The translations under genes were made by a program, and so were the position numbers. A stretch of DNA of 64,000 nucleotides from Macrostomum lignano. Lineage: Eukaryota. A model generated the notes under the pieces. It had not been told where the DNA came from. It did no database searches and worked only from the letters and a program-made list of their open reading frames with translations. The DNA is taken from contig NIVC01000195.1 of NCBI GenBank assembly GCA_002269645.1, forward strand, positions 372,001-436,000. Reading direction: 5' to 3'. Shown here one piece after another: positions 9,737 to 61,212 of this stretch. The stretch's first letter is position 1; each line of letters opens with the position of its first letter.

Positions 9737-10036
9737 CTTGAAATATGACGTTCGAGCAGCATATGTACTTGTGCATGTACTTTTGTGGGATCTCGTACTG
9801 TATTTGTTAAGTATTTGGAATAATAGTCCAGTATCGACATATATATGTAATTGGTAAAAAATTCTCGTAAAATGAATAATGAAAAATGAACCAGAAGGTT
9901 TAATTTGTGCTTCAGCGTCGATTATCTAACAGTCTTCAGGTCTTTTTGCGCAGATTTTCTACAGATTAAGAGCGGTTACAGGTATAGAGGCAAAGCTAGG
10001 TAAGTGAAGTAACGTAATTGAAAATATTTTTAATCC

Positions 10037-26795: not shown

Positions 26796-28604
26796 TCAGC
26801 TGTAGTTGACGCGGAAGCTGACGTGGGAGGCGCACAGGGTGGTCAGCAGCTCCAGCAGCTCGGCCAGCGAGATCACGGAGGACCCCATCCAGAGGCCGAG
26901 GATGCCGCCGAGATGTGACAGCAGGTCCACGGTGGAGTAGCTGCGCTCCTCCGCGATGTACACCACGCTGAGGCTGAATGGGTACACCTGCACCCTTAAG
27001 AAGTGCCTGGAGATGAACTTCTGCACCTGCAGGCAGTGCGACTCGTTCGCGAACCTCCTGCTGCTGTCCATGCGGGTGCAGTCGCCGGGCCGCAGCCGCC
27101 GGGCCCGCACGGCCCTCACCACAGCGGGCAGGCGGGCATCGGGCAGGCTGGAGTTGCCGAACTGCTTCAGGTACGAGTCCAGGATGCCCGAGAAGGTCTG
27201 GAAGATCAGCCTGGCGTCGTAACGGCCGTGCAGGTGGCTGGCGGAGTCGGGCAGCTCGGAAGTGAAGATCTGAAACTGGTAGCTCGATGAGGAGCACTGG
27301 TCCTCTGCGTGCTCAGCCTCCTGCACCAGCTGCTCGGCCAGTCTCAGGTGGCAGCGCAGCGACTCCCAGTTGCTCCACAGGTCCGGCATGTTGAGCCTGA
27401 CAAGCTCCCTGCAGGCTGAGAAGTTCGCTGCCTTGAGCAGCCCACCGCACAGGTCGCTGATTCTCCGCTGGAATCTTCGGAAGCCGCCGCTCTGAGCGTC
27501 GAAGAGGTCGGCGCAGTGCCGTCCCGGCCTCAGGTGCGTCGGCAGGCCGACGGGGCCGGTGGGGAGGCAGCCGCACCTGGCCTGCACCTGCGCCGCCTCC
27601 TGCCACTCCAGCCGGTCCGCCAGGCTGGTCTTGTAGGTCCTCACCGTGGGCACCAGCGGGTCCCGAACGGAGAACTCCGAGGCCTCCTCGCACGGTCTTT
27701 GCGGCGTGTTGAGCAGCTGAGTTCGCACTTCCCGGAGCCCGATCTTCGTCTCGTGGCTGGTGGCAGCCATGATGGAGTCCTCGCTCACCCTCGGCATCGA
27801 GTCGGGCTCGTGCGCCGTCACCAGCACCCCGTTCGTCTCCAGACCCGTATCCGTTGAGCCGTCCAGCATCGCCGGGTCGCTCCAGTTGCGGAAGTGCGGG
27901 TCGGAGGCTGGCGAGTACATGATGAGGCTCAGGCCATCGTGCGGCCTCTCCTGGCTGCCCTCGGGGCGGAAGGTGAAGCAGTTGCCGTACTGCCGGTGGT
28001 AAAAGGCCGAGAACTGCGAGGGCTGGCACAGCGAGTCGCAGAACTTGCACTGGATCAGCAGGTCCTGCACGGACAGCCCCAGGGCGGTGGCGTTTCCAAG
28101 AAAGTGCAGCCCCGGCACCGACTTGGGCAGCTCGAAGACGCCGTGCGAGAGCGTCAGGAAGCTGCTGAGGTCCGGGATTCGCTTCAGCGCGTCGGGGTAG
28201 CCCGCCCTGAAGAAGCGCATCTGCCAGGCCTCGCACACGGTCACGCTGGGGAATCTGAAGTCGTTGAGGATCTCCCGCGTTGAGGACTGCAGTGGGAACT
28301 TGTAGTACTCAGACACCTGCTGGAACACGTGCAGGCCCAGGCAGCTCAGCATCACGGCCAGGACCGCCGCCCACGCGACGCCGCAGGGCGTTGAGCCCAC
28401 GTGCCACAGGCCGTGGATTGCCGCGGTGTCCAGGAACTTCGCCACCGTCCGCCTGCGATGGCGGGACAGCGCCAGCTGGCGGCACTTGGCGCCACCGACG
28501 GAGGCTGGCGCGGCTGGGGCGCGGGACGGCCTCGGGGATGCCTGGGCCGCCGCCGACTCCTCCCGCAGCACCCACACAGGCGGCTCCTCCAGCGGGATCT
28601 GCAT
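26796..28604 (-). CDS. DEG/ENaC (amiloride-sensitive sodium channel) family subunit, intronless, 602 aa
   Basis: Pre-M1 FLDTAAIHG, TM1, FPSVTVC, YGNCFTF, cysteine-rich ectodomain, EERSYSTVDLLSHLGGILGLWMGSSVISLAELLE TM2 signature. Confidence 0.93.
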   Translation of the reverse strand: MQIPLEEPPVWVLREESAAAQASPRPSRAPAAPASVGGAKCRQLALSRHRRRTVAKFLDTAAIHGLWHVGSTPCGVAWAAVLAVMLSCLGLHVFQQVSEYYKFPLQSSTREILNDFRFPSVTVCEAWQMRFFRAGYPDALKRIPDLSSFLTLSHGVFELPKSVPGLHFLGNATALGLSVQDLLIQCKFCDSLCQPSQFSAFYHRQYGNCFTFRPEGSQERPHDGLSLIMYSPASDPHFRNWSDPAMLDGSTDTGLETNGVLVTAHEPDSMPRVSEDSIMAATSHETKIGLREVRTQLLNTPQRPCEEASEFSVRDPLVPTVRTYKTSLADRLEWQEAAQVQARCGCLPTGPVGLPTHLRPGRHCADLFDAQSGGFRRFQRRISDLCGGLLKAANFSACRELVRLNMPDLWSNWESLRCHLRLAEQLVQEAEHAEDQCSSSSYQFQIFTSELPDSASHLHGRYDARLIFQTFSGILDSYLKQFGNSSLPDARLPAVVRAVRARRLRPGDCTRMDSSRRFANESHCLQVQKFISRHFLRVQVYPFSLSVVYIAEERSYSTVDLLSHLGGILGLWMGSSVISLAELLELLTTLCASHVSFRVNYS

Positions 28605-34290: not shown

Positions 34291-35485
34291 CATAGGCGTA
34301 GGAGTGGGGGGGACAGTGGGGCCATGCCCCCTCACTTTTTAAAATTGGGGGGTCAGTAATAGTATCTGGCCCCTCTATATTTTATATGCAAAATGTAGAC
34401 TTGCTTATTTTTTACTCTTTTTTTTTGTTGCTTTGCATAAATGTTTTTTGCTATAGGGTGACAAAATGTGGCACCTGCAATGCTAAAATGGGTGCCTGTG
34501 GTGCTAAAATAGGTGCTTGCAATGGCTATCCTTCAGTTTCATTTGTTTAATTATTTTCAGAGTCTTATATTATTTTTTACCCCTTTTTCAGCATGGCGGG
34601 TCGCCTATCTACTCCGACGATGATTGTCGCGACAAAATAAGACTATCAAATTATTTGGTGGCCCTGAAAAGGGCCGTTTTATCGTTCAGGTACAATTACT
34701 GTACACTAGCTGCAAAGACTGTTCAGGCAGGGTAGTAGTGGCTCACCCAGTATAGGAAGTCCACCAGTTGGGTTAGCTGCAGGTGGCTACGCTCAAAGAA
34801 TAAGCCCTTCCTGATGGACTCCTGAGCGCGGCAGTCCTTGCAGGCCCAGGCCCAGCCATCAATGTAATGATCACCTTGACAACATTGAAGCCGCATTTGG
34901 GGTGTCGTAGGGCAGTTGTTGTTGTGGCACTGGTGCTCATTGGGCAGTAGCCGGTACTTTGCCAGCCAGTGCATTACAGATTGCGTGTCAGCAATCAGGA
35001 TAGTGAGGTCACGCATCTTCATAAATGGAAGATCGCATAGGTTAGTCGTTGGCCTGACCTCAGCCAGAGGGACAATCATTGTCGGAGCAGATGGGTGACC
35101 CGCCATGTTGAAAAAGGGGTAAAAATAATATTAGACTCTGAAAATAATTAAATGAACGAAACTGAAGGATAGCCCTTGCAATGCTAAAATGTGTGCTTGC
35201 AGTGCTAAAATGAGTGCTTGTGGCACTAAAATGGGTGCTTGAGGTGCTAAACTGAGTGCCTGTAGTGCTAAAATAGGGACTGTGGCACTAAAATGAGGGT
35301 CTGCAGCACTAAAATAAGTGTTGACAACATCAATTCTAAAAATAATTGGTACATAATAATGTATATTTTCCATATAAAAAAATGGAATAATCTAATAATA
35401 AAAGGGGATGTACACCTTGTGTATCCCCCTCTAAATCTGCCACTGAACCTGGCCCCCTAATTTTTGAAACATTCCTATGCCTATG
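34291..35485. mobile_element. Older non-autonomous TIR element hosting the Merlin insertion
   Basis: Near-perfect 13-bp inverted ends CATAGGCGTAGGA / TCCTATGCCTATG with G/C-run subtermini; internal 21-bp repeat GTGCTAAAATGGGTGCTTGCA at ~34470-34523 and 35175-35320; no TSD recognised. Confidence 0.5.
34524..35174 (-). mobile_element. Non-autonomous Merlin (IS1595/ISXO2-like) DNA transposon, 651 bp, with N-terminal transposase fragment (34723-35106)
   Basis: ~104-bp TIRs starting GGCTATCC, perfect 8-bp TSD CTTGCAAT; ORF has LL...C..C...M.L......DG..W.C..C...SIRKG.FFERSHL.L zinc-ribbon pattern of Merlin/IS1595 transposases; DDE domain missing. Confidence 0.85.
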
Positions 35486-36153
35486 CTAGGCGCTAGCTAA
35501 ATTAAAGCTAACCATTATTGAGGCATAGGAAGTATTTTAACTAGAAGTATCTTATATATCTAAAGTTCAAGAAGTCTAGATGGATTAATATAAAAATGTA
35601 ATAAATAAACAAGTTATAAATTTATTCAATGTGTAGCTTTAAATAAAATTTTTATTTATTAAATTTCAATAACATATCGGTCCATCCATGAAAACAGTGG
35701 CTTTATTATTTTAGGTTAACATTACAAATATATAAAGTATACATTAATTTTTACTATCTTCCTATTGGCCTTAGCTTAACCTTCTAACAACTATCCACCT
35801 ATAGATAATGGAGCCCTATATATGAATTTCAGTACATTGTTATAATTGTTTAAAGGCAGAGGATTTATAATAGCAAAGAAAAGATTAAGGCCCTTATTTG
35901 TAATAGCAATGCTATAACAATGTTTTTAATTTCAAGCATTAGTTGTGACTCAAAGGGAAACAAAAAGGCAAAAAAGACAACAAAAGAAAAGGAAAAGAAA
36001 AAATATACAAAAAAGGAAATCCAATGAATTAGGTTGAATTTTTTGTACATATTACTCGTAATAGATCTCTTTCAAAGTTTCTGTCTGATCCCAAACCTCC
36101 TAAGGATTTGCTAATCTATTTAGTAACTTATGGAATCATTAGTTCTCTTAACA

Positions 36154-39100
36154 ATGTTGATGGAGAGCGCTGAGCCGAGCACAGACCAGCTGGAGCCAAA
36201 GCAGCAGCCAGCTGTGTCAACTGCTGGCTATGCAGCAGTAAAGCCTGAGTATCTCCTGCCGCCTGCTCCAGCACCTGCCGCAGAGTCCCTAGCGAATGGC
36301 CAGCAGCAGCAAACGGAGCAGTCAAAATCCCGAAAGCGACGGCCCTACCTGCCTGATCGCCCGGCTGAGTGTCGGTCCTACTTCGCCGATGGCGTCTGCC
36401 ACTTTGGCGTCACCTGCCGGCTGTCGCACGACCTGCCCGCCTACCTGGCCACTCGGCCACCAGATCTGGGCCCCTCCTGCTTTGTCTTCGACACCACCGG
36501 CCGCTGCCCGAGCGGCGCTCTGTGCCGATTCGCTGGCGCTCACGTGGACGCCGACGGGCGCAACCTGGCCGATCCCGACAGGCAGCGCGCCTGGGCTGCG
36601 GCCGGCCAGTCAGAGCTGCATGGCCTGGACCGCGACTTACAGCTGGCCCTGCGCCGGGATGACTTCGACTTTGGCGAGGCGTACGCGGTGAGTTTCAGTG
36701 TTGAGTTGTCCCGTCTGTAGCCTTCAGTTAGCCTCCTCGGCTTGCTACAACGGGCTTTGTCTGTCCCAATGTTTCTGCAGGTGTTGCGACAGCACGGCGT
36801 TCAATGCAAAGGGCGATTCGCTGCCGCTGCTTTCAGGGCCGAGGCTAAGGCTGCTGAGTCATCGGCACCGGCAGCTGAGTCATCGGCACCGGCAGCTAAG
36901 TCCTCGGCACCGGCAGCTGAGTCATCGGCACCGTCAGCTGAGTCATCGGCACCGGCAGCTGAGTCCTCGGCACCGGCAGCTGAGTCCTCGGCACCGGCAG
37001 CTAAGTCCTCGGCACCGACAGCTGAGTCAACGGCGCCACTCCCCAGCGCCGCGAGCAATCCGCTTGGCTCTCTGGCCGAAGGGTCGCGCAAGCGCCGCCT
37101 GGACTTTCGCGGTAAGCTGCTACTGGCGCCCCTGACAACAGTTGGCAACCTGCCGTTCCGTCGAATCTGCGTCGACTTCGGCGCCGACGTGACCTGCGGC
37201 GAGATGGCGATGGCGTCCAACCTGCTGCAGGGCCGCAACGCCGAGTGGGCGCTGCTGCGCAGGCACCCCAGCGAGCGGTGCTTCGGGGCGCAGGTGAGCG
37301 AAGCTTCCAATATGAGACTGAGGAGTCACCTGGCTGTTTCTACTGAGTCTGACTGAGTAATATTTTTGTGACAGTCAGAGTTCCGTTGTTAAAATGGCAT
37401 TTTCCATCCCAGGTGTGCGGCTCCCACCCGGACCAGCTGGCCCGCCTCGCCCAGCTGTTGCGAGACCGGGCGCCCCACCTGGACTTCGTTGACCTGAACT
37501 GCGGCTGCCCCATCGATCTCGTGTACCAGCGCGGCATGGGCGCCGGGATGTTGACCCAGCCGAAGCGACTGGAGACCTCCGTGTCCTGCATGGCCGAGCT
37601 GCTCAACTGCCCGCTGACTGTCAAAGTGCGAACCGGGGTGCGGGAAGGCGTTAATGTGGCGCACGAGCTGCTGCCAAGGCTTCGGGCAGCCGGCGCCGCC
37701 GCTGTCACGATCCACGGCAGGTCGAGGGAGCAGCGCTACAGGAGGCTGGCCGACTGGGACTACATTGGCCGCTGCACGGCCGCTGCCAAGGCCGCCTTGC
37801 AAGGTGGGTTTGTTGGAGACGAGATCCCAGCATGCATTTGCTAAATGCAATGGGAAATCCCATGATACCCTCTCCAGTGTTGGGGAATGCGAAAGTCTGC
37901 CTTGTTGCTGACCTATGGAACCCAAAATACCACCTCTGCTGCTGGCTGCCGGCCAGTCAGTACAGGAGAATTCTAATTGGTAGGGTTTCCCATCTCTTCT
38001 ATCCAGTCAATGCAGGGGAATCTAATATGGTGGGGTTTCCCATCTCTTCTATCCAGTCAATGCAGGGGAATCTAATATGGTGGGGGTTCCCGTCTCTTCT
38101 ATCCAGTCAATGCAGGGGAATCTAATATGGTGGGGGTTCCCATCTCTTCTATCCAGTCAATGCAAGGGAATCTAATATGGTGGGGGTTCCCATCTCTTCT
38201 ATCCAGTCAATGCAGGGGAATCTAATATGGTGGGGGTTCCCATCTCTTCTATCCAGTCAATGCAGGGGAATCTAATATGGTGGGGGTTCCCATCTCTTCT
38301 ATCCAGTCAATGCAGGGGAATCTAATATGGTGGGGGTTCCCGTCTCTTCTATCCAGTCAATGCAAGGGAATCTAATATGGTGGGGGTTCCCGTCTCTTCT
38401 ATCCAGTCAATGCAGGGGAATCTAATATGATGGGGGTTCCAGTCAATGCAGGGGAATCTAATATGGTGGGGTTTCCCGTCTCTTCTATCCAGTCAATGCA
38501 GGGGAATCTAATATGATGGGGGTTCCAGTCAATGCAGGGGAATCTAATATGGTGGGGGTTCCCGTCTCTTCTATCCAGTCAATGCAGGGGAATCTAATAT
38601 GATGGGGGTTCCAGTCAATGCAGGGGAATCCAATATGGTAGGGTTTCCCATCTCTTCTATCCAGTCAGTGCAGGGGAATCCAATATGGTGGGGTTTCCCA
38701 TCTCTTCTATTCAGTCAGTGCAGGGGAATCCAATATGGTGGGGTTTCCCATCTCTTCTACCAATTCAGTGCAGGGGAATCCAATATGGTGGGGTTTCCCA
38801 TCTCTTCTATCCAGTCAGTGCAGGGGAATCCAATATGGTGGGGTTTCCCATCTCTTCTATCCAGTCAGTGCAGGGGAATCCAATATGGTGGGGTTTCCCA
38901 TCTCTTCTATCCAGTCAGTTCAGGGGAATCCAATATGGTGGGGTTTCCCATCTCTTCTACCAATTCAGTGCAGGGGAATCCAATATGGTGGGGTTTCCCA
39001 TCTCTTCTATCCAGTCAGTGCAGGGGAATCCAATATGGTGGGGTTTCCCATCTCTTCTATCCAGTCAGTGCAGGGGAATCCAATATGGTGGGGTTTCCCA

Positions 39101-40242
39101 TCTCTTCTACCAATTCAGTGCAGGGGAATCCAATATGGTGGGGTTTCCCATCTCTTCTATCCAGTCAGTGCAGGGGAATCCAATATGGTGGGGTTTCCCA
39201 TCTCTTCTATCCAGTCAGTGCAGGGGAATCCAATATGGTGGGGTTTCCCATCTCTTCTACCAATTCAGTGCAGGGGAATCCAATATGGTGGGGTTTCCCA
39301 TCTCTTCTATCCAGTCAGTGCAGGGGAATCCAATATGGTGGGGTTTCCCATCTCTTCTATCCAGTCAGTGCAGGGGAATCCAATATGGTGGGGTTTCCCA
39401 TCTCTTCTACCAATTCAGTGCAGGGGAATCCAATATGGTGGGGTTTCCCATCTCTTCTATCCAGTCAGTGCAGGGGAATCCAATATGGTGGGGTTTCCCA
39501 TCTCTTCTATCCAGTCAGTGCAGGGGAATCCAATATGGTGGGGTTCCCCGTGTGATTCTAGATTTGAATTTCGCAGCTAACTTAAGCTGTAAATTTACTT
39601 ATAGTTTAATAAATTACACTGTAGGATTATAGAACTGTGATATTGTAGTATAAAGTTAATTAACATAGACATCTCTGACGTACTGAAAGTAATATTAAAG
39701 AGTTTTGCGCTTAAAGCTTCAAACTCTTCTCGAACCCAGATGGCAGCGCCGTAGCCGACGACGACGACTTCTTTGTGATCGGCAACGGTGACGTGTTCAG
39801 CCCAGCGGACCTGGAGGCCGCCCTGGCCACCGGGGTCGACGCCGTGATGGTCGCCAGAGGCGCCCTAGTCAAGCCCTGGCTGTTCACCGAGCTGCGCGAC
39901 GGCCGGCTATGGGACATCAGCAGCTCGGAGAGGATGGACCTGCTTCGCCGGTACGTCAACTACGGCCTGCTGCACTGGGGCAGCGACGCCAAGGGGGTGG
40001 AGACGGTGCGCCGCTTCTTCCTGGAGTGGCAGTCCTTCCTGTGCCGCTACGTGCCCCTGGGCCTGCTGGAGCGGCCACCGCAGCGCAGCAACGAGCGGCC
40101 GCCGGCCTATTTCGGACGGGACGATCTCGAGACCCTCATGGCCAGCCAGCGCAGCGAGGACTGGGTCCGCCTGTCCGCCATGCTGCTGGGCCCGCCGCCT
40201 CCTGGTTTCACTTTCACGCCAAAGCACAAGGCCAGCGGTTGA
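36154..40242 (+). CDS. DUS3L: tRNA-dihydrouridine(47) synthase DUS3L; exons ~36154-36687, 36781-37293, 37413-37803, 39740-40242
   Basis: Two CCCH fingers; [85 protein letters not shown]; phases 0,0,1 consistent; start may be 36130 or 36160. Confidence 0.95.
36850..37038 (+). repeat. Coding minisatellite, 21 bp x9, encoding (AAESSAP)n in the DUS3L linker
   Basis: In-frame units from 36850 within exon 2. Confidence 0.88.
37975..39548. repeat. Intronic minisatellite, 50/51-bp unit (CCAGTCAGTGCAGGGGAATCCAATATGGTGGGGTTTCCCATCTCTTCTAT), ~31 copies, DUS3L intron 3
   Basis: TCTCTTCTAT recurs at 38801, 38851 etc. Confidence 0.96.
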
Positions 40243-43453: not shown

Positions 43454-45071
43454 TCATACTCCATCGCCGGTGGGCCCGAGGTCTGCACCACCGCCGTTCC
43501 CGCTGATGTTGGCGGCCGTCATCGAGCTGTCACTCATCTTGTCGCTGCCAATGAACGACAGCAGCGAATCATCGAAGTGAAACGTGGAGCTAAAGGCCAG
43601 GCTGAGGCCACTGATGTCAGCTTCGATGTCTGAAAGAAGCCATGAAGAATGTTGGAGGTTAATTTCTTAAGATTTTGCTGATAATGTGCATCATGTTTTA
43701 AAAAAATAAACAAGTTTGTATTCCGACTCTAATTATATTTCAATGTACTCAGGGCGCCACCCACTTTCAATTTATGACTCATGCATCATTCGAACTTTAG
43801 AATTCACTCGTACATGTATGTGGATTATTAGACTTTTAGTCATTTACACTCGTATCTCACTGGCGATTGCAGGTAACAATAATAATAATAACAATAATAA
43901 GTGTATGATTATAATATTTAACCTTTAAATATTTCAAATCCAATAAAAATCACAGCTTACTGTTAAAGAGGCTGTTTTTGGTCTGCTTCTGCGGTTCAGA
44001 TTCCTCCAGCTCGGCGAAAGTCCTTGGAGAGCCAACTGACCACACGGAGTGAATGTTCACCCGAGCCAAAAAGCCCATCGGATCTTCAAGGCTTAGCAAC
44101 CATCGTACATCAAAGAGTGCCGCAAAGTTGGCCTCGTGTGTCTCCAGAACGATCCGGCCGCAGTTGGAGCCGGAGCCAATGCGAACTCCGTAGAGTCTTT
44201 GCACTTTGGCTAGAACCTGAGCGTTGGTAATGTTGCAGCTCAGAGTCAGAGAATTCGGTAGAACCAGACTCAATGGAAGTGCTTGAATCAGCCGCTGTTT
44301 GACTTCTAGTACGCGAGTTGCATCCTGTCCTTGAAGGCTAATAATTTCTCCGTTGTGAAACTGCAGCATCACTCCGACCGTGCACAAGAAGCTAGCAAAA
44401 GCAGCCTCGGGAACCGTATCGCTGGGCAAATTGAAATCCTTAATCACTTGAGTACTGGCCACAAGAATGAGGTCCCGCCAGTGCACGTTAGGCAGGCACA
44501 ATGTATTGTAGACTGCGGATGAAAAAACTTTCTGCACTTCAGTGGTAACTTGAATTACTTCAGATGATTGTCTCATGGTTCCGCGCACTGCGATTATTGT
44601 GTAGTCAGAATGCTGCTGACTTGACAACAAGATCTTTTGGCTGAGAGCCTGTTGAGAAAGCATGCACATTTTCTGGACTTTAGAGTAATCCAGACGCCAG
44701 GTTGTACTCGGCACAAAGAGACGGTAGATAAGAAGCTGATTTTGTCGAATGAGCTTGCGGCAAGTAAAAAACTGGTGCACCAGTTGCTCCTCGCTGGCCC
44801 ATGGCTCGGTCTTCATTAAAGCATCAGCGGGGTATAGAAGTACTTCGTCTTCAGTTCGCGAACCCGTTTTGTGCAACTCTGGAGATGCTACTCGCTCAGG
44901 AAAGTGAACGCGAGTATTGGTTCTCGTTTGCAGAAGCTTGTGCGATTGGCCACCCTTCCCAATCAGATGGCTGTGGTCATCGGCTGCTACGCTAATGCGA
45001 AGTGTTGGGCCTCGTTTCATTTTTAGTTCGTTATCGGATTTACGCGATGATATAATGGTATGAATTGGCAT
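43454..45071 (-). CDS. KH-domain RNA-binding protein, Bicaudal-C/GLD-3-like, no SAM domain; exons 45071-43961, 43629-43454
   Basis: LRISVAADDHSHLIGKGG...TNTRVHFPE resembles BicC KH1; later segments look like degenerate KH-like folds; phase-1 intron with GTAAGC donor and TTTCAG acceptor. Confidence 0.65.
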
Positions 45072-48000: not shown

Positions 48001-50241
48001 CACACATGAATCTTGCGAATACTTTATTATTTCTACTGTTAGTAGTATGAATTGGCCATTATTTCCGTAAACTGTCGATAATTTTTGAAAATCTATTTAT
48101 CATGTACATCATTGCTACCCCGCTACCCAGGCAATACGTAGGAAACCAAAGTGGCAAAGTACTTAAGAAAATTTTCAGCATAGCCGCACTAATATTTACG
48201 AGCTACGTGAGTAGTATCGAAGTTGTCAATTGCAGAAGGCATGTAGAGACGCTATTTGGACCAGAGAGTTTCCAATCGACTTAAAAACTTTCTTCCACAC
48301 TGTATGGGCGTCCCACTCTGCGAATAAAAAGCAAAGTCAAAAGAGCTGGCTTGATTTTTAGCAAATGTGCTGTTCGACACACAGGCGCCTCAGCCTCAAA
48401 GCCTAACAGTTTTCATCAGCCACCTGTACACTCCTTCCCGGCACTCAGTGCAGCACCCCAGCGCAGGGGATCCCCTTAACAAACACTCTCGCTTTACTCA
48501 GCGCCCAGCTAGCTGCCCGGACCACAAATCCGGCAGCTGTGTGGCGGCGATGACGGGGAGCAGGCGGGCATGTCGGGCCGCATAGAGAAAAGAGATGCTG
48601 CGCCATGCAGTGAGAAGAGAGGAGGTGGCAGAAATCCGCATCTGAGGCCGCGGCGGTCTCTCCATGCCCTGCCCTCCCAGGATGCGGGCGACTGCGAGGC
48701 CTCATATAGCACTGCAGAATAGCGAGGCTGGCCTAAGGACCGGAGCAGGGCCCGCATCCCCGCCCTGTGTTTGGCTGGCAGGAAACTCGCGTTTCGCACT
48801 CAGTTCTCCTCTCGCAGTCTCCTCTCTTCATCTCTCCTGGCTCATCAGCCTGCAGGGGCCTCCTGCCGCAGCTCCGCTCCTAACCCCTCCCGCTCCCTGT
48901 CTTCCTCCACTCCCATCCTTCTCCCTTTTCCTGGCCCCTTCCTCTTCATTTTCTGATTATTGTGAGGAGGCCCGGCCCTCAGTTTTTTATGCACGAGACC
49001 CGGCGCAGCCGCCCGCATATACGAGTGCCTACCTATACCCCTCTTAGTCGCAGCTCCCCACCCACTCTCCACCGTCAGTTCCTCTCGCCCCCTCCTCTTT
49101 GCCCCCCCCCACACACACACAGGGGCCGAGGCCGAGGGGAGGGGCGAAGCGAGGTGGGATTTCAGGCGACAAGGCGATGGGGCAAGGAGCGGCCGGGCAG
49201 GAAGGCTGAGAGGGCCGGCCAGCCTTGTGGCGATAATTTGGGCGGAGGCGGATGCTGGGAGCCCGGGCCTGATAATCAGCGGGAGCCATCCGGCCACCGC
49301 CCCAAACTCGACTTCTGCATTAGAGAGGGGAGGGGCAGGTGAAGCCCCGGAGTTGGGATCTCGCTTTGTTCCCCCCGCCCCTCCCGCGCCCTGCTGGCCT
49401 GCCGGGCTGCAGGGGACCCCCCGCCTGCCAGCAGAATCGGCCTTAAGCATGGGAGTGGCTAATCGATAGCGGCAGGGAAATGGGAGAGTCTCGCCCTCTC
49501 GCTGCGGGACACGGGCGCCCATAAATTTGGCATGAAGGCGGCGAATGGCTGCGTGGGGACCAAATTCGATTAACCCGCGGGGGTGGCGTCTTCTGGCCAC
49601 CGCTGAACTGGCAGGGATGGATAGCTGCGGAGATGGATGGGCCGGCAGTAGCAGCCCGGAGACATGCGACTCGTTGTGCGACCCCCCTCTGCGCTCCAGA
49701 GACTGTGGAGCCGCTTCTGACAATCCGTTTGAACCCCTCAGCTTGCAGTTGGCTTGGCATTTGAGCTGTCGGGGTCCTTCTGGCCGGCCCATCGGCCAAT
49801 CAGAGCGCAGCAGGCGAGGCGGCATGGCGCATTTTTTCAATGACTTCTTGGTTTGAAAATGAATCTTAAAGAATCTTACAATACAGGAATAGCAAGATGC
49901 AAAACCTGCTCGTACCTGAAGATGCGGAGATTCGGTGTTAGTTCCAAAATATTAGCCAGCCAACCATTCCCAGATGGCGTGCTCACCAGAAGTCATTTCT
50001 ACACAAAACTATATGCAATCTCAGTCAGCTGAGTCAGCTCAGCATCCAAAGAGTTCATCATCAAACTTTGTCTTCCAGCTTAGCTGCTCATGGCTTTTTT
50101 GAAACAGGCGACCCACCGGGAGAGCCATTCAATGGCAATGGCGTGAATTTGGCTGTGGCGCGCAGGAAAGTGCGCCACTGCCACCCCCCCCCCCTGCATG
50201 GCTCCCTCAGCGCTGGCTAAAAGCTTCAAGTTTGCCAAGGG

Positions 50242-50786
50242 GAGATGCCGAGGCCCAGTGTGGGAGGCAGAATCAGGGACACAGCAGCGACGGCTTCCCC
50301 AGCCTGGGAGCTGAACTTCCCACCTAAAGCCCCGCTGCGCAGCCCTGAATCCACTGCCTCCCGTGCCGTGTTTGGGATTCACTCTCAGAATCTCACTCTG
50401 GGATTCACCCTCAGAATCTCACACTGCGATTCACTCTCAGAATCTCTCTCTGCGATTCACTCTCAGAATCTCATTCTGGGATTCACTCTCAGAATCTCAC
50501 TCTGGGATTCACTCTCAGAATCTCACTCTGCGATTCACTCTCAGAATCTCATTCTGGGATTCACTCTCAGAATCTCACTCTGCGATTCACTCTCAGAATC
50601 TCATTCTGGGATTCACTCTCAGAATCTCATTCTGGGATTCACTCTCAGAATCTCACACCGAGATGCCGAGGCCCAGTGTGGGAGGCAGAATCAGGGACAC
50701 AGCAGCGACGGCTTCCCCAGCCTGGGAGCTGAACTTCCCACCTAAAGCCCCGCTGCGCAGCCCTGAATCCACTGCCTCCCGTGCCG
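50242..50786. other. Templated insertion: exact 127-bp direct repeats (50242-50368, 50660-50786) flanking 11 units (50373-50658) of the 26-bp satellite
   Basis: Flanks identical; insert matches 57642-57927 unit by unit including variant order. Confidence 0.9.
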
Positions 50787-51615
50787 GCCGGCTTCTTTGC
50801 ACCGGGAGAGGATGAAGAAGAGAGGCTGCGGCCCGCCCCGCCCACCCGGCAGCTCACATGCAGGGGCGCAGCGTGGGAGGCGGCAACCGAGACGTCACCC
50901 TGCCCCCCTCTGGCTCCCCACTTCCCCTATTTCCCATGCAGCCCTCACTCTCCCTCGGCGGCGGCGGCGGCTCCGCAGTCCCTGCCGCGGGTGCCGCCCC
51001 GCTGCTGGCGGAGATGAAGGGGGTCGGAGGCGCAGGGATTGAATTTGGAGCGGCCTTAAAAAGAATTGTGTGTGTGTGTGTGCGTGTGTGTGGCCGCTGA
51101 TCCCCAGGCCACCTCTGCCATCACACGCATAGACCCAGGCCCTCCCGTCTTCCTCTGCCCCTTCTCTTCCTATGCAAACCAAAGGGAGTGAATCCCCGCT
51201 CAAGTGGGTGGAGGCCCAGCCTCCCGCAAGAGAGGAACTGCAGGGCGTGTGGCTGGGAGCAGCGGGGGGATCTCGGCGATACCCACCGACACACGGCCGG
51301 CTCCCCGGGTCTCCCACGGGCGGGATTTGAGGGGCTGGGCGGGTGTGAGGCAGCCGCATGGGGCGCTTGCAGCGCTGGGGACAGGCAGCGGTGAAGGGGG
51401 GCACTCGAGCGAATCCCCGGCACGCCTAGAGGAAGGCCTCCTGCCCCCCCCCTGTCCCCCTCATCCCACTCACCCACCCCGGTTGCTTCCCTTTAAAACC
51501 CCCGAGCCACCGCTGCAATACCGAAGCCAATGCGCCTGCCCTGTCATTCCGCCTCGCACCGCCTCCCGACCCGACTCTTCTCCATCTGCACTGCAGTGAA
51601 TCATCCGCCTTCCCG

Positions 51616-53628
51616 ATGACCACAGCAGCCGTGACAGGCGGCCTGGACCTCAGCGCCAGCGGCGGCGGCGGCAGGCGGTCTCGCAAGCGGCGCCTCTCTG
51701 ATCGCGGCAGCCCGGCCCCCTCCCCCTGCTCTGCCGACGCCCCCGGGGAAGCAGAGGGCGACTCTCCAGCCTCCCCGGCGCTGCATCTTCATCAATCCTC
51801 GGGTCTCAGCCTTGCCGGCGATTGCGAGGAGGGCGCCCGAGAAGACGAATATGAGGAGGGGGGCTCGGAGGGCGGGCAGAGCGCGACGGGCAACAGCGGT
51901 AGCGGTGGCGGCGGCAGCAAAATGGACGACGAGCGACTGAAGGCATTCAATGTAAGTTGAAGCTTTGAGTTGAGTTGAGCCGCGTCTCCCGGCCTAATCA
52001 GCGAGAAACTCGACACTAACTGAATGCATAGGAGAGGCTGGGAAAATTTCAAATTCTGCACACAAACCTCCCATCCGCGAAGTCTGAGTACTTCAGCCTC
52101 AGGGCATCCGAGACCGTCAGTGTGTGAGCGGGGAGTGCACCTCAGGGCAGGCGAAATAAACATCAGGTGTACGGAAATCGGGATCAGATGTACCGAAATG
52201 AGGTCAGTTGTGAGGATCATGTGTTCCGAAATGAGGTCAGTTGTGAGGATCATGTGTTCCGAAATGAGGTCAGTTGTGAGGATCAGGTGTTCCCAAATGA
52301 GGATCAGGTGTTCCGAAATGAGGATCAGGTGTGCCGAAATGAGGTCAGTTGTGAGGATCATGTGTTCCGAAATGAGGATCAGGTGTGCCGAAATGAGGAT
52401 CAGGTGTGCCGAAATGAGGATCAGGTGTTCCGAAATGAGGATCAGGTGTACGCTAATGAGAGCCGGAAATTAAGCCCTTCATGCGTCGAAGCACACTTTG
52501 CATAAAGCTGCATACCCCCAGTGTGCCGAAATAAATATCAGGTGCTCAGAATGAAATTACGGAAGTCGAAGTGAATCGAAAATATATCAGGGATGTCAGC
52601 AGGGCCTCAGAAATTTTTAATATAAAGCAAATGTGGGATTTCGCCACTCTCGAATCCCGCAGCTGTTCGTGAGGTTTTTCGTTGACGAGAACTTAGACCG
52701 CATGGTGCCGATCTCCAAGCAGCCGAAGGAGAAGCTCAGCGGCATCCTGGAGGCCTGCGACCGTCAGTTTCCCGAGTTCTCGGACAGGGCCAGGAAGCGG
52801 GTCCGCACCTACCTCAAGGCTTGTCGGCGAAACGGTAGAAAGAACGGCGGCTTGCCACAGGAGCTGGTGAGCAGGAGGTTAAAACTATAAAAATGCATGC
52901 CCGCAACAAACTACTCGTTAGTAGAGAGGCAAGCTGTATCACAATGTTTCTCTCAATTTCAGCCAAGGACAACGCCAGCCCACCTGACCTCGGCCACGGC
53001 GGAGGGCATCCTGGAGAAGGCGCTGGCCGGGGAGCGCGAGCTGCAGGCGCAGCTGCACCCAGCCAGGCTCGAGCAGGCCGGGATGCCGCAGGCGCAGCAG
53101 CTCAGCAGGCCGGACAGACCGGCCGAGCAGCAGCGAGTTGCAGAGGCCGCCGCTGCAACCGCCCGCCCGGCAAAACAGGCGAAAGCGACAGCGGCGGCCC
53201 CGGCCATCAGCAAAGACGCCTCCGCCGCGCCTGCGGCTACGAGGGCGCCACCGACGGCGTCTCCGATGGTCCCTCAGGGGCAGGAAGCTTCGGTGGCAGC
53301 GGCATCGCTGCTGATGGGCCTACCGCACGGGGCGCTGCCGCTGACCTCCGTGGCCGCCGCAGCCGCCGCCGGCCTGATGCCACCGTTCGCCGCCTTCGCG
53401 ACACCTTTCCTGCCGCTGCACTTGGCAGCCTCCAGACCGCTGGCAGCGACAGCAGCTGCAGCCACGAACACCGCTGGTCCCTTCGGCGGCTTCATCGGCG
53501 GGTTCGGCGCCCGGCCGTGGGACCCTCGCGAGCGCGACCTGGACTGGCCGGCATTCGAGGCGCTGTTCAGGGCGCAGATGAGCCAGGCGGGCGGTATGGA
53601 CGGCACTGCAGTGACTGCCCCGCGGTGA
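51616..53628 (+). CDS. NOL4: Nucleolar protein 4 / NOL4L-like; exons 51616-51951, 52663-52866, 52963-53628 (further 5' exons possible)
   Basis: ERLKAFN|[24 protein letters not shown]...[22 protein letters not shown] and [17 protein letters not shown] match the NOL4 conserved block; phases 0,0 consistent. Confidence 0.88.
52165..52450. repeat. Intronic composite minisatellite (GTGTTCCGAAATGAGGATCAG, ~21/33-bp units), NOL4 intron 1
   Basis: Tandem CCGAAATGAGG motif. Confidence 0.88.
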
Positions 53629-53827: not shown

Positions 53828-54228
53828 GCTACTCAGGGCCTCATCGCTGAGGCGAATGCCACTCAGGGTCTCATTCCTGAGGAGAATGACACTCAGGGTC
53901 TCATTCCTGAGGAGAATGGCACTCAGGGTCTCATTCCTGAGGAGAATGACACTCAGGGTCTCATTCCTGATGAGAATAACACTCAGGGTCTCATTCCTGA
54001 TGAGAATGGCACTCAGGGTCTCATTCCTGAGGAGAATGACACTCAGGGTCTCATTCCTGAGGAGAATGGCACTCAGGGTCTCATTCCTGAGGAGAATGAC
54101 ACTCAGGGTCTCATTCCTGAGGAGAATGCCACTCAGGGTCTCATTCCTGAGGAGAATGACACTCTGGGTCTCATTCCTGAGGAGAATGACACTCAGGGTC
54201 TCATTCCTGAGGAGAATGCCACTCAGTC
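53828..54228. repeat. Minisatellite, 30-bp unit (ACTCAGGGTCTCATTCCTGAGGAGAATGAC), ~13 copies, 3' of NOL4
   Basis: Strict 30-bp periodicity; CATTC/GAATG mini-hairpin in each unit. Confidence 0.95.
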
Positions 54229-54924
54229 TCACAGCTAGAGAATGGCGCTGAGCCTGAGTCCCCGGATCCGCTGCTGCAGCCGCAGCTCCCCAGAGCTCAG
54301 AGCCTCACGTCCCCGTCCGAGCAGGAGCACAGCAAGATGGCCAGAAATTTCCGTGAAGTGGCCAGCTTCCTGGGCCCACACCGCTGACTACATGGAGACG
54401 CAGATGCAGCTGAGCTGCCACACAGCGACAGCAGCAGCTTCAGCAAAAACAAAGACTGAATTTTTGTGGGACCAAGACAGCGCAGAAATATTGTAATAAA
54501 TCAGATTAATCCTGATCATTGTGATGCGATCTGATCAGTTTTCTTAATAAATAATCTCTCCCACCAATATGCTGTGCAATCAGCTAAAGTTCAAATCAGA
54601 TTTCTCAAGTCACGAATTTCAGAAGCATTACATGCATGTATAAACTGCTTGGCCAATCGAGATTGCAGATGCACGCCGCTGCACCCAGCAACCGCAGAAC
54701 CCAAATAAGTAGTAGACGCACACAAACCCTCCTCCTATGATTCCACGTGTTCGCGCTGGCTTGTTTAAATCGTTGCACTGAGCAGCTTTGAAATAAAACT
54801 GACACTGAACTCGCAGTCGCCAACTGCATTTTGTCTGACTTTTTCTTTATCTTTCCAGAACATGCGTTTGACAAGTAGCAGGCCTTTTACTCACCCTTAG
54901 AGATTCACTTTATGCATTTGGTCT

Positions 54925-57900
54925 CAGAATCTCACTTTGCAATTCACTCTCAGAATCTCACTCTGCAATTCACTCTCAGAATCTCACTCTGGAATTCACT
55001 CTCAGAATCTCACTCTAGGACTCACCCTCAGAATCTCACACTGCGATTCACTCTCAGAATCTCACTCTGGAATTCACTCTCAGAATCTCACTCTGGAATT
55101 CACTCTCAGAATCTCACTCTGGAATTCACTCTCAGAATCTCACTCTAGGACTCACCCTCAGAATCTCACACTGCGATTCACTCTCAGAATCTCACACTGC
55201 GATTCACTCTCAGAATCTCACTCTGGAATTCACTCTCAGAATCTCACTCTAGGACTCACCCTCAGAATCTCACACTGCGATTCACTCTCAGAATCTCACT
55301 CTGGAATTCACTCTCAGAATCTCACTCTGGGATTCACCCTCAGAATCTCACTCTGCGATTCACTCTCAGAATCGCACTCTGGAATTCACTCTCAGAATCT
55401 CACACTGGGATTCACCCTCAGAATCTCACACTGCGATTCACTCTCAGAATCTCACTCTGGAATTCACTCTCAGAATCTCACACTGGGATTCACTCTCAGA
55501 ATCTCACTCTGCGATTCACTCTCAGAATCTCACTCTGGGATTCACTCTCAGAATCTCACACTGGGATTCACCCTCAGAATCTCACACTGCGATTCACTCT
55601 CAGAATCTCATTCTGGGATTCACTCTCAGAATCGCACTCTGGAATTCACTCTCAGAATCTCACACTGCGATTCACTCTCAGAATCTCACTCTGGGATTCA
55701 CCCTCAGAATCTCATTCTGGGATTCACCCTCAGAGTCTCACACTGCGATTCACTCTCAGAATCTCACTCTGCGATTCACTCTCAGAATCTCATTCTGGGA
55801 TTCACTCTCAGAATCTCACTCTGGGATTCACTCTCAGAATCTCACACTGCGATTCACTCTCAGAATCTCACACTGCGATTCACTCTCAGAATCTCACACT
55901 GGGATTCACTCTCAGAATCTCACTCTGGGATTCACCCTCAGAATCTCACACTGCGATTTACTCTCAGAATCTCTTTCTGCGATTCACTCTCAGAATCTCA
56001 TTCTGGGATTCACTCTCAGAATCTCACTCTGGGATTCACTCTCAGAATCTCACACTGCGATTCACTCTCAGAATCTCATTCTGGGATTCACCCTCAGAAT
56101 CTCACTCTGGGATTCACCCTCAGAATCTCACACTGCGATTCACTCTCAGAATCCCACTCTGTGATTCACTCTCAGAATCTCACTCTGGGATTCACTCTCA
56201 GAATCTCACACTGCGATTCACTCTCAGAATCTCACTCTGCGATTCACTCTCAGAATCTCATTCTGGGATTCACTCTCAGAATCTCACTCTGGGATTCACC
56301 CTCAGAATCTCATTCTGGGATTCACTCTCAGAATCGCACTCTGGAATTCACTCTCAGAATCTCATTCTGGGATTCACTCTCAGAATCGCACTCTGGAATT
56401 CACTCTCAGAATCTCATTCTGGGATTCACTCTCAGAATCTCACTCTGGGATTCACTCTCAGAATCTTATTCTGGGATTCACTCTCAGAATCTCACACTGC
56501 GATTCACTCTCAGAATCTCATTCTGGGATTCACTCTCAGAATCTCACTCTGCGATTAACTCTCAGAATCTCCCCATGCAATTCACTCTCAGAATCTCACA
56601 CTGCGATTCACTCTCAGAATCTCATTCTGCGATTCACTCTCAGAATCTCATTCTGGGATTCACTCTCAGAATCTCACACTGCGATTCACTCTCAGAATCT
56701 CATTCTGGGATTCAATCTCAGAATCTCACTCTGCGATTAACTCTCAGAATCTCCCCCTGCGATTCACTCTCAGAATCTCATTCTGGGATTCACTCTCAGA
56801 ATCTCACTCTGGGATTCACTTTCAGAATCTCATTCTGGAATTCACTCTCAGAATCTCACACTGCGATTCACTCTCAGAATCTCATTCTGGGATTCAATCT
56901 CAGAATCTCCCCCTGCAATTCACTCTCAGAATCTCACACTGCGATTCACTCTCAGAATCTCATTCTGCGATTCACTCTCAGAATCTCACTCTGCGATTCA
57001 CTCTCAGAATCTCACACTGCGATTCACTCTCAGAATCTCATTCTGGGATTCAATCTCAGAATCTCACTCTGCGATTAACTCTCAGAATCTCCCCCTGCGA
57101 TTCACTCTCAGAATCTCACTCTGCGATTCACTCTCAGAATCTCATTCTGCGATTCACTCTCAGAATCTCACTCTGCGATTCACTCTCAGAATCTCATTCT
57201 GGGATTCACTCTCAGAATCTCACTCTGGGATTCACTCTCAGAATCTCACACTGCGATTCACTCTCAGAATCTCACTCTGCGATTCACTCTCAGAATCTCA
57301 TTCAGGGATTCACTCACAGAATCTCACTCTGCGATTCACTCTCAGAATCTCATTCTGGGATTCACTCTCAGAATCTCACTCTGGGATTCACCCTCAGAAT
57401 CTCACACTGCGATTCACTCTCAGAATCTCTCTCTGCGATTCACTCTCAGAATCTCATTCTGGGATTCACTCTCAGAATCTCATTCTGGGATTCACTCTCA
57501 GAATTTCACTCTGGGATTCACTCTCAGAATCTCACACTGCGATTCACTCTCAGAATCTCACTCTGCGATTCACTCTCAGAATCTCATTCAGGGATTCACT
57601 CTCAGAATCTCACTCTGCGATTCACTCTCAGAATCTCATTCTGGGATTCACTCTCAGAATCTCACTCTGGGATTCACCCTCAGAATCTCACACTGCGATT
57701 CACTCTCAGAATCTCTCTCTGCGATTCACTCTCAGAATCTCATTCTGGGATTCACTCTCAGAATCTCACTCTGGGATTCACTCTCAGAATCTCACTCTGC
57801 GATTCACTCTCAGAATCTCATTCTGGGATTCACTCTCAGAATCTCACTCTGCGATTCACTCTCAGAATCTCATTCTGGGATTCACTCTCAGAATCTCATT

Positions 57901-58021
57901 CTGGGATTCACTCTCAGAATCTCACACTGCGATTCACTCTCAGAATCTCTCTCTGCGATTCACTCTCAGAATCTCATTCAGGGATTCACTCTCAGAAATC
58001 ACTTTGGGATTCACTCTCAGA
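54925..58021. repeat. Satellite array, 26-bp unit (TGGGATTCACTCTCAGAATCTCACTC), ~119 copies, 3.1 kb
   Basis: Continuous periodicity; GATTC/GAATC mini-hairpin per unit; the 713-aa ORF is a by-product. Confidence 0.97.
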
Positions 58022-58195
58022 ACTTCAGTCTAAAATTCTGAAGTTTAAAAAATTAAAATTCTAAAGTCTAAAATTCTGATCTTACTCCAAATTTCCCCAA
58101 GAATATCACTCTGGAATCTGGATTCACCCTCGGAATCTCGGAATTCGATCATATTATAAAAGTGAAAATCAACATAAATTAAATTAACTTCTTTC

Positions 58196-60519: not shown

Positions 60520-61212
60520 GAGTGAGAGGTGAGAGTGGGACTGAGTGAGAGGTGAGAGTGGGAGAGGTGAGAGTGGGAGAGGTGAGAGTGGGACTGAGAG
60601 GTGAGAGTGGGACTGAGAGGTGAGATTAGAACTGAGTGAGAGGTGAGAGTGGGACTGAGTGAGGGGTGAGAGTGGGACAGAGTGAGGGGTGAGAGTGGGA
60701 CAGAGTGAGGGGTGAGAGTGGGACTGAGTGAGGGGTGAGAGTGGGACAGAGTGAGGGGTGAGAGTGGGAGAGGTGAGAGTGGGACAGAGTGAGGGGTGAG
60801 AGTGGGAGAGGTGAGAGTGGGACAGAGTGAGGGGTGAGAGTGGGACAGAGTGAGGGGTAAGAGTGGGACAGAGTGAGGGGTGAGAGTGGGACAGAGTGAG
60901 GGGTAAGAGTGGGACAGAGTGAGGGGTGAGAGTGGGACAGAGTGAGGGGTAAGAGTGGGACAGAGTGAGGGGTGAGAGTGGGACAGAGTGAGGGGTGAGA
61001 GTGGGACAGAGTGAGGGGTGAGAGTGGGACAGAGTGAGGGGTGAGAGTGGGACAGAGTGAGGGTGGGACTGAGTAAGAGGTGAGAATGAGGCTGAGTGAA
61101 GGTGAGAGTGGGAGAGGTGAGAGTGGGACTGAGAGGTGAGAGTGGGACTGAGTGAGAGGTGAGGGTGGGACTGAGTGAGAGGCGAGAGTGGTACTGAGTG
61201 AGGTGAGAGTGC
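60520..61212. repeat. Purine-rich minisatellite, ~23-bp unit (GAGTGAGGGGTGAGAGTGGGACA), ~30 copies
   Basis: Tandem GGTGAGAGTGGGA motif with shorter variants. Confidence 0.93.

What the first reader, a model, noticed from the sequence alone, without database searches (positions are those of the whole stretch)
50242..50786. Exact copy of a distant satellite segment inserted between 127-bp direct repeats
Seen: 50373-50658 (11 x 26 bp) is identical, including the order of variant units (CACCCT, TCTCTC, CATTC), to 57642-57927 near the distal end of the 3.1-kb array on the far side of NOL4. It is flanked by two identical 127-bp copies of unique sequence with 4-nt (TGTT) and 1-nt junction additions, and has no TIR, poly(A) or transposase. 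Established: 127 bp is far longer than transposon TSDs; template-switch repair (FoSTeS/MMBIR, synthesis-dependent or Pol theta end joining) yields duplications with templated inserts and junction nucleotides. Inference: a very recent event showing how a satellite seeds a new locus; the GATTC/GAATC hairpin in each unit may promote switching.
Basis: partly seen in the sequence, partly recalled or inferred. Interest (0 to 1): 0.72.

Follow-up and report, generated by a model that had tools for sequence, protein, structure and literature searches.

The report
Satellite block copied into duplicated target
A 286-base block of a 26-base tandem repeat has been copied, letter for letter, from a 3.1-kb array into a gene's upstream region 7 kb away, between two identical 127-base copies of the target; it looks like a fresh DNA-repair scar and a clean but not novel example of a satellite seeding a new site.

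Summary
50373-50658 (11.0 x 26 bp) is identical to 57642-57927. That is the only exact match. The next best in-register window has 11 mismatches, and no two 11-unit windows inside the parent array are identical. The insert sits between two perfect 127-bp direct repeats (50242-50368, 50660-50786), with fillers TGTT and C and no microhomology. It has no transposon features. None of the other 25 tandem arrays in the window has flanking repeats.

Best reading: one recent repair event duplicated 127 bp of target and pasted in a copy of the nearby satellite, leaving the donor intact. The pathway cannot be fixed from sequence. I favour a staggered break with fill-in and end joining of a copied fragment (about 0.4) over replicative template switching (about 0.3). 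Re-integration of a circle is disfavoured (about 0.08). An assembly artefact (about 0.12) cannot be excluded without reads. 127 is also a classic assembler k-mer size, though exact repeats of several hundred bp (370-bp and 625-bp stretches of repeated 250-mers) resolved elsewhere argue against a pure k=127 assembly.

The host looks like a flatworm (nearest Macrostomum lignano, 54% protein identity). No second allele or relative could be found. This is a new member of a known kind, of moderate interest.

The parts
50242..50368 (+). Left copy of the 127-bp target duplication
   Evidence: 127/127 identical to 50660-50786. It is the only perfect dispersed direct repeat in the window.
50369..50372 (+). 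4-nt filler TGTT at the left junction
   Evidence: Matches neither the donor's upstream bases (..CATTC) nor the target continuation (GCCGGC). No template for junction k-mers lies nearby.
50373..50658 (+). Inserted satellite block, exactly 11 units of 26 bp, in the same orientation as the donor
   Evidence: 286/286 identical to 57642-57927, the unique best source. TRF reports 10.9 copies of a 26-bp period.
50659..50659 (+). 1-nt filler C at the right junction
   Evidence: The donor continues with T (TGCG...), and the base before the left repeat copy is G.
50660..50786 (+). Right copy of the 127-bp target duplication
   Evidence: Identical to 50242-50368. It continues into unique sequence GCCGGCTTC, which with the end of the repeat forms the 10-bp palindrome GCCGGCCGGC in the reconstructed empty site.
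57642..57927 (+). Donor segment, retained in place (units 105-115 of 118 in the parent array)
   Evidence: Exact match. It is embedded colinearly in the array, whose neighbours show an 11-unit lag duplication.
54922..58022 (+). Parent 26-bp satellite array (3.1 kb, about 91% matches) with degenerate edges
   Evidence: TRF, sequence read, unit table.
51616..53628 (+). NOL4-like gene exons lying between target and donor (context only). The insertion is about 830 bp upstream of the putative ATG.
   Evidence: ORFs and motifs LKAFN, DENLDRM, HLTSA. Homologues all carry PF23079 at 39-70% identity. tblastn maps the helical domain to 52663-53124.

Best explanation
A single, very recent DNA-break repair event occurred in the GC-rich upstream region of a NOL4-like gene. 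Shown by the sequence: 127 bp of target is now present twice, and between the copies lies TGTT + 286 bp + C. The 286 bp are a perfect, same-orientation copy of one specific stretch of the satellite array 7.3 kb downstream, and that stretch is still in place, so the event was copy-and-paste. Inferred mechanism: the target was broken with staggered cuts about 127 nt apart on opposite strands, or left with long complementary single-stranded tails. Each tail was filled in, so both ends carried the 127 bp. A copy of the nearby satellite, either a displaced or synthesised strand or a short linear fragment, was joined between the two ends by non-homologous end joining. That joining added 4 and 1 untemplated nucleotides and used no microhomology. 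The result is a new 11-unit satellite seed next to a gene. The general statement (a real, single-step, repair-mediated duplicative insertion) carries about 0.8. The specific fill-in plus end-joining route carries about 0.4.
For: Exact 286-bp identity to a unique donor, and exact 127-bp duplication. The donor is retained. There is zero microhomology and there are short fillers at both junctions, with no nearby template for the fillers. The insert has no inverted termini, no poly(A) and no coding capacity, being made only of satellite units. None of 25 other arrays has flanking repeats, so this is an event rather than a property of arrays here. The most recent intra-array duplication already shows 3 differences in 286 bp, whereas this copy shows 0. 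Literature: tandem duplications arise by fill-in of complementary 3' overhangs followed by NHEJ, and may stem from nearby nicks on opposite strands (PMC8355091). Templated insertions at breaks are mostly about 50-300 bp, copy-paste, and often come from repetitive or fragile regions, with 0-20 nt of microhomology (PMC11724301).
Against: A donor only 7 kb away in cis is what replicative template switching predicts. Free-fragment capture needs a proximity argument to explain it. The 127-nt overhang is longer than the overhangs tested experimentally (49 nt in PMC8355091). Both insert ends fall at the same phase of the repeat (C|TG), which this model explains only by chance (1/26) or by a preferred break site. 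No reads or second allele were available, so the structure itself is unverified.
Confidence: 0.4

Rival explanations
1. Replicative template switching (FoSTeS/MMBIR). A stalled or broken fork finished copying the 127-bp segment and jumped 7.3 kb ahead to the satellite. It copied 286 nt, then jumped back to the start of the 127-bp segment and carried on, giving a duplication with a templated insert in one step.
For: The donor is close, in cis and in direct orientation. Two switches explain both the duplication and the insert without needing a second break end. Such junctions can be blunt or carry small insertions, and the process can run with 0-6 bp of homology. Templated inserts of 376 and 815 bp are documented (PMC5120786). 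Sproul et al. invoke it for satellite junctions (PMC7403614). The satellite strand forms hairpins (z -6.2 and -5.1) that could stall a polymerase at a fixed phase.
Against: Neither junction has microhomology, the hallmark of the mechanism, and both have fillers with no identifiable template.
Confidence: 0.3
2. Assembly or polishing artefact. The A-insert-A structure, or its perfect identity, was created by the assembler, a gap filler or over-polishing of repeats, and is not in the animal's genome.
For: The repeat length of 127 equals the classic maximum k-mer of SPAdes and SOAPdenovo, where loop or circular edges carry k-base terminal overlaps (my own knowledge). The perfect identity of both repeat pairs could be inflated by consensus polishing with multi-mapped reads. 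No independent sequence of this species could be found.
Against: The window has no Ns. It resolves long exact repeats inside other arrays: 370-bp and 625-bp stretches made of repeated 250-mers, which a pure k=127 graph could not do. Two clean junctions 291 bp apart, each with its own filler, would both need read support in any graph assembler. Polishing would blend variants rather than reproduce one specific 11-unit order.
Confidence: 0.12
3. Re-integration of an extrachromosomal circle. Recombination between repeat units popped out an 11-unit circle, which was later linearised and inserted at a break.
For: The insert is exactly 11.0 units. This is the signature Sproul et al. describe, where the first and last truncated monomers sum to one monomer (PMC7403614). 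Eleven units is also the lag of the latest duplication in the distal array. Satellites are common on such circles (PMC7719264; PMC11610590).
Against: The insert is colinear with the donor over all 286 bp. From the flanking bases, the circle would have to be opened within about -1 to +2 nt of where it closed (sequences). That is about 4/286 if opening is random. There is no short homology between satellite and target of the kind proposed for circle integration. The 11-unit lag duplication (about 57148-57771) does not cover the distal part of the donor, so recombination at that level cannot produce this circle.
Confidence: 0.08
4. Transposable-element or retro-element insertion, with the satellite carried by or mobilised as an element and the 127 bp as its target-site duplication.
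For: Flanking direct repeats are formally a target-site duplication. Satellites can travel inside non-autonomous elements (reviewed in PMC11610590).
Against: The insert contains only satellite units and is an internal slice of the array. It has no terminal inverted repeats, LTRs, poly(A) or ORF. 127 bp is far beyond the 2-20 bp duplications of known elements. There is no other copy in 64 kb.
Confidence: 0.03

Closest known systems
Small tandem duplications from fill-in of complementary 3' overhangs followed by NHEJ (CST/Pol alpha-primase; Schimmel et al. 2021, PMC8355091)
   Same: A perfect direct duplication of the sequence between two staggered break points, with joints lacking microhomology and consistent with NHEJ.
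   Different: Here a 286-bp foreign segment lies between the copies, and the duplication (127 bp) is longer than the usual <100 bp and the 49-nt overhangs tested. The enzymes are untestable here.
Copy-paste templated insertions at double-strand breaks (yeast Break-Ins / Dna2, Rad27, RPA studies, PMC11724301; class 2 templated sequence insertion polymorphisms, PMC5110952)
   Same: Size (about 50-300 bp), donor retained, donor from a repetitive region, and junctions with untemplated additions.
   Different: Those insertions typically lack a target duplication (class 2) and draw donors genome-wide. Here the donor is 7 kb away and the target is duplicated by 127 bp.
FoSTeS/MMBIR duplication-insertion rearrangements (PMC5120786)
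   Same: Two template switches would give a duplication plus a templated insert from nearby in cis. Blunt or insertion junctions are tolerated.
   Different: There is no microhomology at either joint, and the scale is hundreds of bp rather than kb to Mb.
Dispersal of satellite repeats into euchromatin (Drosophila Rsp-like/1.688, PMC7403614; human alpha repeats, PMC7719264; Tribolium Cast satellites, PMC11610590)
   Same: A short block of satellite monomers appears at a new, gene-proximal site, with an integer number of monomers.
   Different: Published cases show 2-10 bp (human) or 32 bp (four Drosophila clusters) duplications, microhomology or pre-existing satellite at the target, and donors that are usually unknown. 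Here the donor is identified to the base, the target is unique sequence, the duplication is 127 bp, and colinearity argues against a randomly opened circle.

Membership tests
Transposable element insertion | Short target-site duplication of a length characteristic of the family (about 2-20 bp) | tested here: not met
   The duplication is 127 bp.
Transposable element insertion | Defined element termini (TIR, LTR or poly(A)) and/or coding capacity | tested here: not met
   The insert is 11 satellite units. It starts TGGGATTC and ends CTCACAC, with no inverted ends and no A-run.
Transposable element insertion | Multiple genomic copies with identical ends | not testable with these tools
   Only the 64-kb window is available. 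Within it there are no other copies.
Templated (copy-paste) insertion at a DNA break | Inserted sequence identical to a donor elsewhere that is not deleted | tested here: met
   286/286 identity, with the donor 57642-57927 intact in the array.
Templated (copy-paste) insertion at a DNA break | End-joining type junctions (0 to few nt of microhomology, untemplated additions) | tested here: met
   0 nt of microhomology, with fillers TGTT and C and no local template.
Class 2 templated sequence insertion polymorphism (PMC5110952) | No target-site duplication | tested here: not met
   A 127-bp duplication is present.
Fill-in tandem duplication (3' overhang, Pol alpha-primase/CST, NHEJ) | Perfect direct duplication of the inter-nick segment, joined without microhomology | tested here: met
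   The 127-bp copies are identical, and no microhomology is used at the joints.
Fill-in tandem duplication (3' overhang, Pol alpha-primase/CST, NHEJ) | Dependence on Ku, 53BP1, Shieldin, CST and Pol alpha | not testable with these tools
   Requires genetics in the organism.
FoSTeS/MMBIR | Microhomology at template-switch junctions | tested here: not met
   None at either junction. Not strictly obligatory according to PMC5120786.
FoSTeS/MMBIR | Iterative switches to nearby templates producing copy-number gain | tested here: met
   Two switches would suffice. The donor is 7.3 kb away in cis, and there is a net gain of 418 bp.
eccDNA-mediated satellite re-integration | Integer number of monomers (terminal partial monomers sum to one) | tested here: met
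   286 = 11 x 26, with both ends at the same phase C|TG.
eccDNA-mediated satellite re-integration | Circular permutation relative to the donor array unless opened at the closure point | tested here: not met
   The insert is fully colinear. The closure point would have to lie within -1 to +2 nt of the opening point (sequences).
eccDNA-mediated satellite re-integration | Short homology (2-10 bp) between satellite and target (PMC7719264) | tested here: not met
   No shared bases at the joints. Sharing of k-mers between the 127-bp segment and the satellite is no higher than in the flanks.
De Bruijn-graph overlap artefact | Assembly built from a k=127 graph alone, so that no longer exact repeats are resolved | tested here: not met
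   Exact repeats of 250 bp and more are resolved in other arrays, in stretches of 370 bp (12769-13138 and 13229-13598) and 625 bp (38921-39545), with no Ns.
De Bruijn-graph overlap artefact | Absence of raw reads spanning the structure | not testable with these tools
   No reads. No sequence of the same species was found in the collections.

The most novel reading that the evidence does not exclude
The satellite spreads as integer-unit blocks because each 26-bp unit carries a structure-determined break or polymerase entry and exit point at C|TG, inside the CAGAAT-CTC-ATTCTG hairpin that spans the unit boundary. The same process and block size (11 units, 286 bp) would then produce both the latest in-array duplication and this ectopic seed. 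That would make it a self-propagating, transposase-free module with a preferred quantum of movement.
Probability: 0.08. Interest if true: 0.65.

Novelty: new member of a known kind. Interest (0 to 1): 0.38.

Why it matters
How satellite repeats reach new, gene-proximal sites is usually inferred from old, eroded junctions with unknown donors, and circles are the favoured vehicle. If this locus is real, donor, product, both junctions and the target duplication are all intact to the base. It shows that a linear, copy-paste repair route can seed a satellite in unique sequence, with a long target duplication and no homology. It also argues against a randomly opened circle in this instance. It places 11 repeat units about 830 bp upstream of a gene's start codon, so it may be a polymorphic regulatory variant. 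It does not reveal a new kind of mechanism.

Tried and rejected
1. Exact-protein look-ups of four window ORFs found nothing. Two were junction-spanning; the other two were the KH and ASC genes.
2. Protein searches found no same-species or close relative. The best hits were NOL4 family members at 39-70% identity and Macrostomum lignano VIT-VWA at 54%. The third search, planned for an empty-site ORF, was therefore judged futile and not spent.
3. Metagenome scans for the end of the 127-bp segment and for the satellite dimer gave 0 hits.
4. I looked for templates of the fillers TGTT and C. Only scattered 7-8-mers far away turned up, at about chance level.
5. I tested for short homology between the 127-bp segment and the satellite. 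The k-mer sharing exceeds shuffles but is no higher than in the neighbouring flanks, so it was rejected.
6. I looked for G-quadruplexes or strong inverted repeats at the target. There is no G4 motif inside the 127 bp. The 9-bp inverted repeat is at chance level. Only a 10-bp palindrome at the right edge is notable.
7. RAG-like or integrase-like readings of the TG...CAC ends were rejected. The orientation is wrong for signal ends and the duplication is far too long.
8. A recombination circle at the level of the 11-unit lag duplication was rejected. That duplication does not cover the distal part of the donor.
9. The first repeat finder was swamped by the array and gave nothing usable. It was replaced by self-BLAST.

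Full report
OBSERVATION.
The region reads exactly as described.
- 50373-50658 is 286 bp, which is 11.0 units of a 26-bp repeat. TRF reports 10.9 copies at 93% matches.
- It is identical over 286/286 bases to 57642-57927, and the match cannot be extended by a single base on either side.
- The large array (54922-58022, 118 units in this register) is heterogeneous. The next best in-register placement of the insert has 11 mismatches.
- Among the 4753 non-overlapping in-register pairs of 11-unit windows inside the array, none is identical. The minimum is 3 mismatches, and the median over all 5778 pairs is 26.
- The variant order (BFKABBABASD in my unit alphabet) occurs once.
- The insert is flanked by 50242-50368 and 50660-50786, which are 127/127 identical. 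This is the only perfect dispersed direct repeat found by a self-BLAST of the window.
- Between repeat and insert lie TGTT on the left and C on the right.

WHICH COPY IS THE DONOR.
The 286 bp are embedded colinearly in a 3.1-kb array. That array has degenerate edges on both sides and its own internal history: units from about 57148 to 57485 are nearly identical to the units 286 bp downstream. The small block has no such context and sits in unique GC-rich sequence. The large array is therefore the parent, and it still holds the segment, so the event was copy-and-paste.

AGE.
There are no differences in 286 + 127 = 413 compared positions. By a Poisson bound (my arithmetic), divergence between the copies is below about 0.7% at 95% confidence. 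The most recent duplication inside the array already shows 3 differences per 286 bp, so the ectopic copy is younger than that. One caveat: consensus polishing of repeats can inflate identity.

JUNCTIONS.
- The donor is preceded by ...CTCATTC and followed by TGCG....
- The target reads ...GTGCCG | GCCGGC... at the right edge of the repeat and ...CCAAGG | GAGATG... at the left edge.
- No base is shared at either joint, so there is no microhomology.
- K-mers spanning the fillers have no copies nearby. The few distant 7-8-mers are at chance level.
- Both insert ends fall at the same phase of the unit, between C and TG. This has a 1/26 chance for random ends.

WHAT IT IS NOT.
- The insert consists only of satellite units, with no inverted termini, LTR, poly(A) or ORF.
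- The 127-bp duplication is far longer than any transposon target duplication.
- The other 25 tandem arrays in the window (22.6% of the sequence, each with a different unit) have no flanking direct repeats above shuffled controls.
This is therefore an individual event and not the way arrays generally arise here.

CONTEXT.
- Between target and donor lie exons of a NOL4-like gene on the + strand. There is a putative ATG at 51616, and the conserved helical domain maps to 52663-53124.
- No C-terminal exons were found, so the array may be intronic or downstream of the gene.
- The insertion is about 830 bp upstream of the ATG, in sequence with 0.60-0.67 GC.
- The window carries several long ORFs with recognisable domains: VIT-VWA, a DEG/ENaC channel, a KH protein and a DUS3L-type zinc finger.
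- The VIT-VWA protein is by far closest to Macrostomum lignano (54% identity, E 5e-181, against E 3e-127 for the next hit). The organism is therefore probably a flatworm not represented in the collections.
- Consequently no second allele, haplotype or sister species could be retrieved.

MECHANISM.
Any model must put the 127 bp on both sides and paste a copy of a nearby sequence between them, without homology.

(a) Staggered break with fill-in and end joining.
- Complementary 3' overhangs are filled in by Pol alpha-primase and joined by NHEJ, giving tandem duplications. Such breaks may come from nearby nicks on opposite strands (PMC8355091).
- Breaks also acquire copy-paste templated insertions. 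These are mostly 50-300 bp, often from repetitive or fragile DNA, with 0-20 nt of microhomology (PMC11724301).
- The blunt joints with 4-nt and 1-nt additions fit this best.

(b) FoSTeS/MMBIR.
- Two switches, forward 7.3 kb and then back 127 bp behind the exit point, give the same product and naturally explain the nearby cis donor.
- Its hallmark microhomology is absent, although blunt and insertion junctions are tolerated (PMC5120786).

(c) Circle re-integration.
- This explains the integer unit number (PMC7403614).
- However, the insert is colinear with the array. From the bases flanking the donor, the circle would have to be reopened within about -1 to +2 nt of its closure point, roughly 4/286 if opening is random. 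That compares with 1/26 for a linear piece having in-phase ends. The likelihood therefore mildly favours a linear or templated copy.

Polymerase theta alone is an unlikely author, because its templated inserts are typically up to about 30 nt.

I commit to (a) at about 0.4, with (b) at about 0.3. The sequence cannot separate them.

HAIRPINS.
The satellite strand folds better than dinucleotide shuffles on both strands (z -6.2 and -5.1). The best stems are CAGAAT-CTC-ATTCTG in units with the CATTC variant, and they span the unit boundary where the copy begins. This is compatible with a structure-determined break or stall point but does not demonstrate one.

ARTEFACT.
- 127 is the classic maximum k of several de Bruijn assemblers, and loop edges carry k-base overlaps, so the number deserves suspicion.
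- Against this, the window has no Ns and resolves long exact repeats inside other arrays: stretches of 370 bp (12769-13138 and 13229-13598) and 625 bp (38921-39545) made of repeated 250-mers.
- Both junctions would need read support in any graph assembler.
- I leave about 0.12 for an artefact. Only reads can settle it.

UNEXPLAINED.
The insert length (11 units) equals the lag of the latest in-array duplication, and both ends share one phase. Together these allow, but do not establish, a preferred block size and break point for this satellite.

COMPARISON AND VERDICT.
The closest known phenomena are:
- templated insertions at breaks;
- fill-in tandem duplications;
- MMBIR duplication-insertions;
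- euchromatic dispersal of satellites in Drosophila, humans and Tribolium.

This case differs from published satellite dispersals in several ways. The donor is identified to the base. The target is unique sequence. There is no homology at the joints. The target duplication is much longer (127 bp against 2-10 bp or 32 bp).

It is a clean new member of a known kind. It is useful as a caught-in-the-act example, not a new mechanism. Interest is 0.38.

Noticed in passing
window 1-64000: 26 separate tandem arrays with unrelated units (periods 11-50 bp, up to 3.1 kb) occupy 22.6% of the window. None but the finding has flanking direct repeats.
   Followed up: yes
window 57148-57771: The distal end of the 26-bp array carries a recent 11-unit (286-bp) lag duplication, with 0-1 mismatch per unit. 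It includes an exact 166-bp repeat, 57317-57482 = 57603-57768. The lag equals the length of the ectopic insert.
   Followed up: partly
window 2402-2943 and 9086-9633 (also 1394-1480 and 7445-7531): A dispersed direct duplication (548 bp at 97.4%, plus 87 bp at 85%) about 6.1-6.7 kb apart. One copy lies inside the VIT-VWA ORF (2037-4346, - strand) and the other inside ORF 8958-9776, so it looks like a partial gene duplication.
   Followed up: no
window 2037-4346 (-), 26796-28604 (-), 43950-45071 (-), 36130-36720 (+): Long uninterrupted ORFs with Pfam domains: VIT+VWA (769 aa), amiloride-sensitive Na channel (602 aa), KH (373 aa) and a DUS3L-type CCCH zinc finger. The genome looks gene-dense and intron-poor. 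The nearest relative found is Macrostomum lignano at 54% identity.
   Followed up: partly
window 34634-34680 (-), with inverted repeat 34517-34628 / 35071-35181: A histone 3' UTR stem-loop (Rfam RF00032, 38.5 bits) lies next to a 112-bp inverted repeat at 90% identity. This suggests a divergent histone gene pair.
   Followed up: no
window 53831-54226: The 30-bp minisatellite 700 bp upstream of the large array is weakly similar to the 26-bp unit (local score 16 against a shuffled maximum of 15; shared TCTCATTC..TG.GGA). The 23-bp array at 60520-61211 also scores above its null, but both units are CT-rich. They may be related, or the similarity may be compositional.
   Followed up: partly
window 50365-50368 + 50787-50792 (reconstructed empty site): The right edge of the duplicated 127 bp falls 1 nt from the centre of a perfect 10-bp palindrome, GCCGGCCGGC. 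A run of 12 C lies about 37 bp upstream of the left edge (about 50194-50205).
   Followed up: partly
window 12769-13138 and 13229-13598; 38921-39545: Very long exact repeats inside two other arrays: 370-bp stretches of repeated 250-mers in the 23-bp array, and a 625-bp stretch of repeated 250-mers in the 50-bp array. These point to recent large in-array duplications and to a long-read assembly.
   Followed up: no
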